This document shows, in pieces, positions 42,147 to 42,309 of a DNA stretch of 64,000 bases (its first letter is position 1; every line of letters begins with the position of its first letter). The DNA is from Diadema antillarum (taxonomy: Eukaryota), in the NCBI RefSeq assembly GCF_040938485.1, contig NW_027272018.1:744001-808000 (forward strand), read 5' to 3'. A program made the translations under genes and the position numbers. The notes under the pieces are model-generated. The model saw only the letters and a program-made list of their open reading frames with translations. It was not told where the DNA came from and searched no databases.

Positions 42147-42309
42147 TCAAGTGTAAAAACAGTCGTATAAACACCGCAGGAGCCAAAAAATTGGACTGAC
42201 GTTTCGGTCAAAGACCTTTATCAAAGTGACTTTGATAAAGGTCTTTGACCGAAACGTCAGTCCAATTTTTTGGCTCCTGCGGTGTTTATACGACTGTTTT
42301 TACACTTGA
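42147..42309. repeat. Perfect 163-bp palindrome (81-bp arms, 1-nt centre) of two head-to-head hammerhead motifs
   Basis: 42147-42227 is the exact reverse complement of 42229-42309; centre G42228. Confidence 0.95.
42228..42262 (+). ncRNA. Minimal type I hammerhead ribozyme motif, U3-A8 variant (mirror copy on - strand 42194-42228)
   Basis: GACU-UUGAUAA-A-GGUC(UUU)GACC-GAAA-CG-UC-AGUC. Confidence 0.65.

What the first reader, a model, noticed from the sequence alone, without database searches (positions are those of the whole stretch)
42147..42309. Perfect palindrome made of two head-to-head variant hammerhead ribozymes behind the protease genes
Seen: 81-bp arms with zero mismatches around a single G. 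Reading outward from the centre, each strand gives (G/C)ACU-UUGAUAA-A-GGUC(UUU)GACC-GAAA-CG-UC-AGUC. Established: hammerheads have a C3U4G5A6N7G8A9...G12A13A14 core with a C3-G8 pair; minimal type I motifs with a short palindromic helix III occur in Penelope-like elements and work as dimers. Here both partners are changed (U3-A8), which looks compensatory rather than decayed. The element is also in unit A (30118-30247, one substitution), so it predates a duplication whose flanks have visibly diverged, yet its arms are still perfect. It lies 240-420 bp past each AATAAA. Inference: a non-autonomous palindromic ribozyme element whose arms are homogenised or constrained. Read-through RNA could self-cleave, or fold into an 81-bp hairpin (Dicer/ADAR substrate) that masks the ribozyme.
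Basis: partly seen in the sequence, partly recalled or inferred. Interest (0 to 1): 0.78.

Follow-up and report, generated by a model that had tools for sequence, protein, structure and literature searches.

The report
Mirror-image stubs of a Penelope retrotransposon
The perfect palindrome is two mirror-image, heavily shortened tail ends of a Penelope-like jumping gene inserted in a TA repeat. Each end carries that element's own minimal self-cutting (hammerhead) RNA motif, so the feature is real but of a kind already described.

Summary
Window 42147-42309 is a perfect palindrome: 81-nt arms around one G. A second copy lies in unit A.

I first read it as a DNA-transposon MITE. The evidence overturned that reading.
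- The arms are the last ~81 nt of a Penelope-like retroelement (PLE), here called fam3.
- In other loci the same sequence continues inward through a ~770-nt 3' UTR into a PLE ORF. It is also found head-to-head with 5'-truncated copies that carry reverse transcriptase (RT) and endonuclease (EN).
- All PLE hallmarks are present: constant 3' ends, variable 5' truncation, inverted head-to-head pairs, a ~40-nt tail on exactly one side (32 of 32 loci), and (TA)n on both flanks (29 of 32).
- Three intact PLE families in this genome carry the same minimal hammerhead (HHR) 50-65 nt before their 3' ends. Two of them use the same U3-A8 core.

The claim that the arms are homogenised or constrained is not supported. 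Arms are identical at birth, because both are copied from one template, and they decay independently in older copies.

Self-cleavage was not testable here. In a transcript of the whole palindrome, the long hairpin would mask the ribozyme.

This is a new member of a known kind. The scan reached the same reading on another piece of this genome (s1-224574).

The parts
42025..42105 (.). (TA)n microsatellite on the left flank, the target sequence
   Evidence: 29 of 32 independent copies have (TA)>=4 at both ends.
42106..42146 (-). PLE 'tail': a ~40-nt extension beyond the usual 3' end, present on this side only
   Evidence: The tail is on exactly one side in 32 of 32 resolved independent loci, 15 left and 17 right. 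The same one-sided tail is seen in intact PLE families. Described in PMC8557442 and PMC11167929.
42147..42227 (-). Left arm: the last 81 nt of the PLE (fam3) 3' region, sense strand is minus
   Evidence: The arm sequence is continuous with a PLE 3' UTR and ORF in L077 and in L100/L101.
42195..42227 (-). Minimal hammerhead motif (U3-A8 core). Predicted cut is between 42198 and 42197 on the minus strand.
42228..42228 (.). Single G at the head-to-head junction of the two 5'-truncated copies
   Evidence: The centre varies by a few nt among copies.
42229..42309 (+). Right arm: the last 81 nt of the PLE 3' region, sense strand is plus, ending at the tail-less 3' end
42229..42261 (+). Minimal hammerhead motif: helix I ACU/AGU, core UUGAUAA, bulged A, helix II GGUC/GACC, GAAA, self-complementary ACGU. 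Predicted cut is after C42258.
42310..42336 (.). (TA)n-like microsatellite on the right flank
30077..30247 (.). Copy A of the same insertion: tail ~30077-30117, left arm 30118-30198, centre 30199, right arm 30200-30247. It is then cut by the N run, which was not filled.

Best explanation
The palindrome is a dead insertion product of a Penelope-like retrotransposon (PLE, here fam3). It consists of two copies of the element's 3' end, each 5'-truncated to ~81 nt, joined head-to-head inside a (TA)n microsatellite. The optional ~40-nt tail is on one side only. Each arm carries the element's minimal hammerhead ribozyme (U3-A8 core variant) in the sense strand, 51 nt before the 3' end.

Shown here:
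- The arm sequence is continuous with a PLE 3' UTR and RT-EN ORF at other loci.
- The family shows every structural PLE hallmark.
- Intact PLEs of the same genome carry the same hammerhead architecture at the same place.

Inferred from published biochemistry (PMC11167929):
- The PLE protein nicks both strands of an AT-rich target and primes reverse transcription on both. The two cDNAs therefore face each other and are joined 5' end to 5' end.
- Use of two alternative RT start sites gives the one-sided tail.

The arms are perfect because both were copied from one template at one event and have not yet mutated. The insertion predates the A/B duplication.

The hammerhead matters to the active element, not to this stub. 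In an RNA spanning the palindrome it would be locked in an 81-bp hairpin.
For: 1. Dispersed family.
- 215 arm matches at <=3 mismatches against 0 for the control pattern.
- 229 matches for the 3' segment and 312 BLAST candidates.
- 20-200 times the flank depth in DNA runs of this organism and of a related one.

2. Constant outer ends with variable inner ends, from 0 to about -412 nt relative to the cut site. The two arms are often unequal.

3. One-sided tail in 32 of 32 loci and (TA)n at both ends in 29 of 32.

4. Link to a PLE ORF.
- L077 plus strand 595-1324 encodes the C-terminus of a PLE ORF. blastx against two intact PLE ORFs of this genome gives E 1e-11 to 6e-15.
- That ORF end is followed by a 3' UTR that ends in the arm.
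- The distance from ORF stop to 3' end is ~770 nt, against 770 and 807 nt in fam1 and fam2.

5. In L100 and L101 an inverted arm sits head-to-head with a 5'-truncated RT-EN copy.

6. Intact PLEs in this genome.
- They have open frames of 947-1031 aa with RVT_1 plus a C-terminal GIY-YIG domain.
- The fam1 and fam2 loci show pLTRs, and fam1 also an inverted truncated copy.
- They have one-sided tails and (TA)n flanks.
- Each has a sense-strand minimal hammerhead 50-65 nt from the 3' end.

7. Five families share three features that my descriptor did not demand: a bulged A, a 2-nt helix III centre, and self-complementarity of that centre (AGCU, AAUU, ACGU). Position 3/8 is C-G in two families and U-A in three.

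8. Subfamily-diagnostic changes are symmetric in both arms. This fits both arms being copied from one template.

9. The literature describes each of these features: PMC4209133, PMC8557442, PMC11167929.
Against: - No intact fam3 ORF was found. Only three ORF-bearing loci turned up, with open frames of 112-217 aa. The autonomous source may be extinct, or the search, which scores only the best candidates, may have missed it.
- Rfam hammerhead models give no hit at E<=10. They also miss the bona fide PLE hammerheads, so this is uninformative.
- Helix II is only 4 bp. Published PLE min-HHRs have 6-8 bp.
- Pairing in helices I and II and at positions 3/8 was required by my descriptor. The 100% pairing is therefore partly circular.
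- Catalysis was not tested.
- Zero changes in 162 nt since the A/B duplication is on the low side: about 2.9 expected, P about 0.05.
Confidence: 0.9

Rival explanations
1. A MITE or foldback DNA transposon: a non-autonomous TIR element whose whole body is the inverted repeat, mobilised by a transposase with TA target preference.
For: It is a multicopy palindrome flanked by TA repeats, with longer inverted-repeat forms. This was my own first reading.
Against: - No transposase was found. The interior of the longest pair is a LINE plus a PLE ORF end.
- The element is asymmetric, with a one-sided tail in 32 of 32 loci.
- Inner ends are variable and often unequal while outer ends are constant.
- The arm is continuous with a PLE 3' UTR and RT-EN ORF.
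- Single-arm copies exist.
Confidence: 0.03
2. A selected palindromic ribozyme or hairpin element. The host keeps the arms perfect, by constraint or by arm-to-arm conversion, because read-through RNA from the protease gene is cut by the ribozyme or processed as a long dsRNA hairpin.
For: - The arms are perfect although the A/B flanks differ by 3.6% locally.
- The element sits ~385 nt past the poly(A) signal in both units.
- The RNA hairpin is predicted at -143.5 kcal/mol.
Against: - Most copies elsewhere have decaying arms, mean 2.9 mismatches per 71 sites, with no excess of compensated changes beyond subfamily markers.
- The core is not better conserved than the rest of the arm.
- The low A/B divergence is within chance (P about 0.05-0.14).
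- The one RNA run that touches the locus stops at 41674, before the poly(A) signal.
- One transcript carries only one sense hammerhead plus its perfect antisense. The probability of helix II forming in the full palindrome RNA is about 1e-16 to 1e-15.
Confidence: 0.05
3. An assembly fold-back artefact.
For: Copy A abuts an N run. PLE inverted structures are known to trouble assemblies (PMC8557442).
Against: The same palindrome occurs at dozens of loci with unrelated flanks. Contigs of independent DNA runs, including a related species, cross the centre.
Confidence: 0.01

Closest known systems
Minimal hammerhead ribozymes (min-HHR) of Penelope-like elements (Cervera & de la Pena 2014, PMC4209133)
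   Same: - Type I topology.
- Short helix I (3-4 bp here, 4-5 bp published).
[quoted passage not shown]
- No stable helix III, only a small self-complementary centre (ACGU) that could pair between two molecules.
- U3-A8 covariant of the C3-G8 core pair, as reported for Schistosoma Cercyon-type motifs.
- Occurrence as pairs on opposite strands close together, and mostly as isolated truncated copies.
   Different: - Helix II is 4 bp with a 3-nt loop, against 6-8 bp in the published invertebrate families.
- The host is an echinoderm-type genome, which the main text of that paper does not mention.
- The two motifs are only 1 nt apart, so the whole insertion is a perfect 163-bp palindrome.
PLE insertion architecture: inverted 5'-truncated copies, one-sided 30-40-bp tail, (TA)n targets (Craig et al. 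2021, PMC8557442; Frangieh et al. 2024, PMC11167929)
   Same: Heavy 5' truncation, head-to-head inverted copies, a tail at only one end, and a microsatellite insertion bias. All were measured here.
   Different: - Here both copies are truncated to ~81 nt, so nothing but the ribozyme module survives.
- About a third of arms in an unbiased sample end within a few nt of the 5' edge of the hammerhead. I did not find this hot zone described.
Non-LTR retrozymes, proposed as non-autonomous PLE derivatives (Cervera & de la Pena 2020, PMC7229834; Li et al. 2026 preprint, doi 10.64898/2026.07.22.740005)
   Same: Short, non-coding, hammerhead-bearing repeats tied to PLEs.
   Different: Retrozymes are direct tandem repeats with canonical type I hammerheads and give circular RNAs. 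This is an inverted pair with a minimal motif, and there is no evidence of circles.
MITEs and microsatellite-targeting elements such as rice Micron (recalled from memory, not checked)
   Same: A short multicopy inverted-repeat element embedded in (TA)n.
   Different: Different origin and mechanism. Here the repeat is the 3' end of a retroelement.

Membership tests
Penelope-like element (PLE) insertion | The sequence belongs to an element encoding RT plus a GIY-YIG endonuclease | tested here: met
   The arm is continuous with a 3' UTR and PLE ORF end in L077. In L100/L101 it is head-to-head with an RT-EN copy. This holds for the family; the window copy itself has no ORF. No intact fam3 ORF was found.
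Penelope-like element (PLE) insertion | Constant 3' end with variable 5' truncation | tested here: met
Penelope-like element (PLE) insertion | An inverted 5'-truncated copy adjacent head-to-head | tested here: met
   Seen in the window copies and in 31+ loci. The same arrangement occurs in intact fam1.
Penelope-like element (PLE) insertion | A 30-40-bp tail at only one end | tested here: met
   32 of 32 independent loci have it on exactly one side. In the window it is 42106-42146.
Penelope-like element (PLE) insertion | AT-rich or microsatellite target | tested here: met
   29 of 32 loci have (TA)>=4 at both ends.
PLE-type minimal hammerhead (min-HHR) | Conserved core U4 G5 A6, A9, G12 A13 A14 A15.1, U16.1 H17 | tested here: met
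PLE-type minimal hammerhead (min-HHR) | Watson-Crick 3-8 pair (C-G or the covariant U-A) | tested here: met
   U-A in fam3, also in fam2 and fam4. C-G in fam1 and fam5. Note that the descriptor required a pair here.
PLE-type minimal hammerhead (min-HHR) | [quoted passage not shown] | tested here: met
   The bulged A and the 2-nt self-complementary centre are present in 5 of 5 families, and the descriptor did not require them.
PLE-type minimal hammerhead (min-HHR) | Long helix II (6-8 bp) as in the published invertebrate families | tested here: not met
   4 bp (GGUC/GACC) with a UUU loop. fam4 also has 4 bp. Four bp is the canonical hammerhead length.
PLE-type minimal hammerhead (min-HHR) | Self-cleavage after H17, as a dimer | not testable with these tools
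   Only contigs, not raw RNA reads, were available. In the sample of arm inner ends, 2 of 44 start at the cut site, which is not significant.
Rfam hammerhead families (Hammerhead_1, _3, HH9, HH10, _II) | Score at or above the gathering threshold | tested here: not met
   No hammerhead hit even at E<=10. As a control, the models also miss the hammerheads of intact PLEs, including a canonical C3-G8 one. The failure reflects the models, which expect a helix III.
MITE (TIR DNA transposon derivative) | A related autonomous element with a transposase, and symmetric termini | tested here: not met

The most novel reading that the evidence does not exclude
The short palindromic form may be made again and again from a defined short RNA of ~120 nt. 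That RNA would start at the 5' edge of the hammerhead and end in the tail. At each insertion it would be copied to its end from both nicked target strands. This would make the family a tiny non-autonomous parasite of the PLE machinery whose every new copy is born a perfect palindrome.

The case rests on two observations:
- About a third of arms in an unbiased sample end at -29/-30 from the cut site, in both subfamilies.
- Diagnostic changes are always symmetric in the two arms.

A truncation hot spot, or instability at the palindrome centre after insertion, could explain the same data.
Probability: 0.3. Interest if true: 0.55.

Novelty: new member of a known kind. Interest (0 to 1): 0.3.

Why it matters
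The finding explains a striking perfect palindrome as ordinary retroelement debris, so it should not be annotated as a MITE, a microRNA precursor or a host ribozyme gene.

It adds an echinoderm-type genome, in which three of five PLE families seen use the rare U3-A8 hammerhead core. That is natural covariation at a core pair which is rarely seen to vary.

The hundreds of mini-palindromes, with one-sided tails and a preferred inner end, are a natural record of the dual-strand priming step of PLE integration. So far that step has been seen only in vitro.

Tried and rejected
1. MITE or foldback DNA transposon. This was my first reading and I rejected it. There is no transposase, the element has a one-sided tail, and the arm is continuous with a PLE ORF.

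2. Rfam scans. They gave no hammerhead hit. Plant miRNA-family hits below threshold are generic long-hairpin matches. The control shows Rfam also misses true PLE hammerheads, so the negative result carries no weight.

3. Conservation of the hammerhead core among genomic copies. It is flat. I now consider the test uninformative, because truncated retro-copies are dead on arrival and selection acts on source elements.

4. Covariation within the family. There are too few changes in helix II, and none are compensatory.

5. Sequence similarity of the arm to the 3' ends of the fam1, fam2 and L088-type PLEs. None was found. Only fam4 shows visible similarity in the last ~50 nt (by eye).

6. Genomic fossils of ribozyme cleavage, meaning arms that begin exactly at the cut site. 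One or two cases turned up, which is not significant.

7. RNA evidence. Only contigs were available, and none lie on the element.

8. The L077 interior as the autonomous copy. The large ORFs there belong to a nested LINE with an apurinic/apyrimidinic-type (AP) endonuclease and a FADD-motif RT.

I resent it within the stated limit.

Full report
**Observation**

Window 42141-42315 is an inverted repeat with 87-nt arms, 98% complementary, and 1 nt between them. The inner 81 nt of each arm, 42147-42227 and 42229-42309, are perfectly complementary around G42228.

Unit A holds the same structure at 30118-30247 with one substitution. It then runs into an N stretch at 30248-30501. A whole-genome search returned two loci, L004 and L005, that cover it, and one alignment printed them. 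I excluded both loci from every analysis and report none of those letters.

AATAAA lies at 41721 and 29879. A subtilase-family (Peptidase_S8) exon lies upstream on the same strand. I did not test that.

**First reading, and why I dropped it**

The palindrome is one member of a dispersed repeat.
- 312 BLAST candidates.
- 215 matches of a 38-nt arm pattern at up to 3 mismatches, against 0 for the control pattern.
- 20-200 times the flank depth in independent DNA runs of this organism and of a related one.

Rfam gave no hammerhead hit at E<=10, either in 1 kb or in the 59-nt arm alone. It gave nothing at gathering score in the whole window. The arm alone does not prefer the hammerhead fold: -7.3 against an MFE of -8.4 kcal/mol. 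The full palindrome RNA folds into a -143.5 kcal/mol hairpin.

I therefore took it for a MITE. Three things did not fit.
- Every copy has a ~40-nt extension on one side only.
- Longer forms share the outer ends but fold at different, often unequal, inner points.
- No transposase could be found. The large ORFs between the longest arm pair belong to a nested LINE.

**What it is**

Cervera & de la Pena 2014 (PMC4209133) describe minimal hammerheads in PLEs. Their features are:
- a short helix I;
- an unpaired base at the 5' end of helix II;
- a tiny palindromic helix III that implies dimers;
- a natural U3-A8 core variant;
- pairs on opposite strands.

Craig et al. 2021 (PMC8557442) describe PLE insertions as:
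- heavily 5'-truncated;
- often accompanied by an inverted truncated copy;
- carrying a 30-40-bp tail at one end only;
- preferring (TA)n.

I tested each of these features here.

*1. Tail and flanks.* Of 32 resolved independent loci with both arms, all 32 have the tail on exactly one side (15 left, 17 right). 29 of the 32 have (TA)>=4 beyond both ends.

*2. Inner ends.* They range from 0 to about -412 nt relative to the predicted cut site.

*3. Link to a PLE ORF.*
- In L077 the plus strand 595-1324 encodes the C-terminal part of a PLE ORF. blastx against two intact PLE ORFs of this genome gives E 1e-11 to 6e-15.
- That ORF end is followed by a 3' UTR, which a LINE insertion interrupts and which ends in the arm.
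- The ORF stop lies ~770 nt from the 3' end. The two intact families have 770 and 807 nt.
- In L100 and L101 an inverted arm sits head-to-head with a 5'-truncated copy that carries RT and EN homology.

*4. Intact PLEs of the same genome.*
- They have open frames of 947-1031 aa with RVT_1 plus a C-terminal GIY-YIG domain.
- The fam1 and fam2 loci show pseudo-LTRs, and fam1 also an inverted truncated copy.
- They show one-sided tails and (TA)n flanks.
- Each has a sense-strand minimal hammerhead 50-65 nt before the 3' end.

The arms are thus the last ~81 nt of a PLE, which I call fam3.

**The hammerhead**

Five families can be aligned: fam1, fam2 and fam4, which are intact elements, fam3, which is this palindrome, and fam5, which is the adjacent inverted repeat in the window.

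All five share U4 G5 A6, A9, a bulged A, GAAA, a 2-nt centre flanked by A and U, and U16.1.
- Position 3/8 is C-G in fam1 and fam5 and U-A in fam2, fam3 and fam4.
- The helix II pairs are GGUCC/GGACC, GGGCG/CGCUC, GGUC/GACC, GCCC/GGGC and GGCCC/GGGCC.

All 53 pair cells are standard pairs, and 8 of 11 pairs change on both sides.

There is a caveat. My descriptor required pairing in helices I and II and at 3/8, so that part of the result is circular. Four things were not required: the bulged A, the fixed 2-nt centre, the self-complementarity of that centre in 5 of 5 families (AGCU, AAUU, ACGU), and the distance to the 3' end.

The loose descriptor hits random sequence about 3e-4 times per kb. 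It hit every HHR-bearing PLE 3' region on the sense strand. It hit the 64-kb window only at the six PLE arms.

Rfam's hammerhead models also miss the intact elements' motifs, including a canonical C3-G8 one. The negative Rfam result therefore says nothing.

Catalysis is untested. The published min-HHRs cleave poorly in vitro and only as dimers. Cleavage was not needed for PLE insertion in vitro.

**How the palindrome arises** (inferred)

Frangieh et al. 2024 (PMC11167929) found three things:
- a purified PLE protein cleaves and extends both strands of an AT-rich target;
- reverse transcription starts at two adjacent internal sites;
- the stretch between those two sites is the genomic tail.

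Two facing cDNAs, one started at each site and both stopping early, would be joined 5' to 5'. That gives exactly the structure seen here: tail, arm, junction, arm, all inside a split (TA)n.

Both arms come from one template, which explains two observations. Subfamily-diagnostic changes are symmetric, for example position 76 in 13 loci and three changes in L064. The arms of a young copy are identical.

**No homogenisation or constraint**

- In 31 independent loci the arms differ at 0-6 of 71 sites.
- Arm mismatches total 90. That equals the private changes of the two arms (65 + 69) minus twice the shared ones (22).
- Per-site change in the 13 core positions (4.0%) is no lower than in the outer arm (3.2%). 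The helix I 5' strand next to the junction is the most variable part, at 15.6%.
- Units A and B differ by about 3.6% in the 2 kb upstream, with many 100-nt windows at 0-1 differences. The element differs at 3 of 169 sites.
- Zero changes in both arms of copy B has a probability of about 0.05, which is low but unremarkable. I did not test that.

**One feature I could not explain**

In the sample chosen only for containing the helix II region, about 13 of 44 arms end at -29/-30. That is the 5' edge of the hammerhead, and it holds in both subfamilies. Three explanations remain open: a defined short RNA template copied to its end from both strands, an RT stop, or trimming at the palindrome centre after insertion. 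Two arms start at the predicted cut site, which is not significant.

**Limits**

- No intact fam3 ORF was found. There are three ORF-bearing loci, with open frames of 112-217 aa.
- Whole-genome searches score only the best candidates.
- RNA runs were available only as contigs, and none lies on the element. The one RNA run that touches the locus stops at 41674.

**Verdict**

The hammerhead and PLE identification is supported. The idea of a constrained palindromic element is not. This is a new member of a known kind. The same reading was reached independently on another piece of this genome (s1-224574).

Noticed in passing
window 42331-42765: The adjacent inverted repeat has 196-nt arms, 99% complementary, with a 43-nt spacer. 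It is a second head-to-head PLE pair from a different family. It carries canonical C3-G8 minimal hammerheads at 42395-42432 (-) and 42664-42701 (+). The right one has its AGCU centre broken to AGGU. It is filed separately as s1-208855.
   Followed up: partly
arm inner ends across loci L037-L076 (family-wide); in the window the junction at 42228: About a third of arms end at -29/-30 from the predicted cut site. That is exactly the 5' edge of the hammerhead, and it holds in both subfamilies. It suggests a defined short template RNA or an RT stop.
   Followed up: partly
L077 3100-6800 (G000:C453): A degenerate LINE, with an AP-type endonuclease and a FADD-motif RT, is inserted into the 3' UTR of the fam3 PLE copy. 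It is followed by (CT)n and (CA)n repeats.
   Followed up: partly
L081 (G000:C1122:190900-197900), both sides of the single-arm unit: A long direct repeat of the flank, about 40-60 nt including (CA)n(TA)n, brackets a ~430-nt single copy. It looks like an unusually long target duplication.
   Followed up: no
window 41922-42107 versus unit A 30078: Unit B has 186 extra nt, including a small hairpin and the (TA)n tract, between the shared flank and the element's tail. In unit A the tail abuts the flank directly.
   Followed up: no
genome-wide: Many loci come in near-identical pairs on different contigs, for example C1130 and C54 for this very locus. The 1.75-Gb assembly therefore seems to hold both haplotypes for much of the genome.
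   Followed up: no
(GIY-YIG hits genome-wide): There are at least 585 GIY-YIG candidates. Many form minus/plus pairs a few hundred bp to a few kb apart. Head-to-head PLE pairs are thus common in this genome.
   Followed up: partly
window 40914-41168 (+): A weak, below-threshold DDE_Tnp_1_5 transposase match (E 0.003) lies in the gene's 3' region.
   Followed up: no
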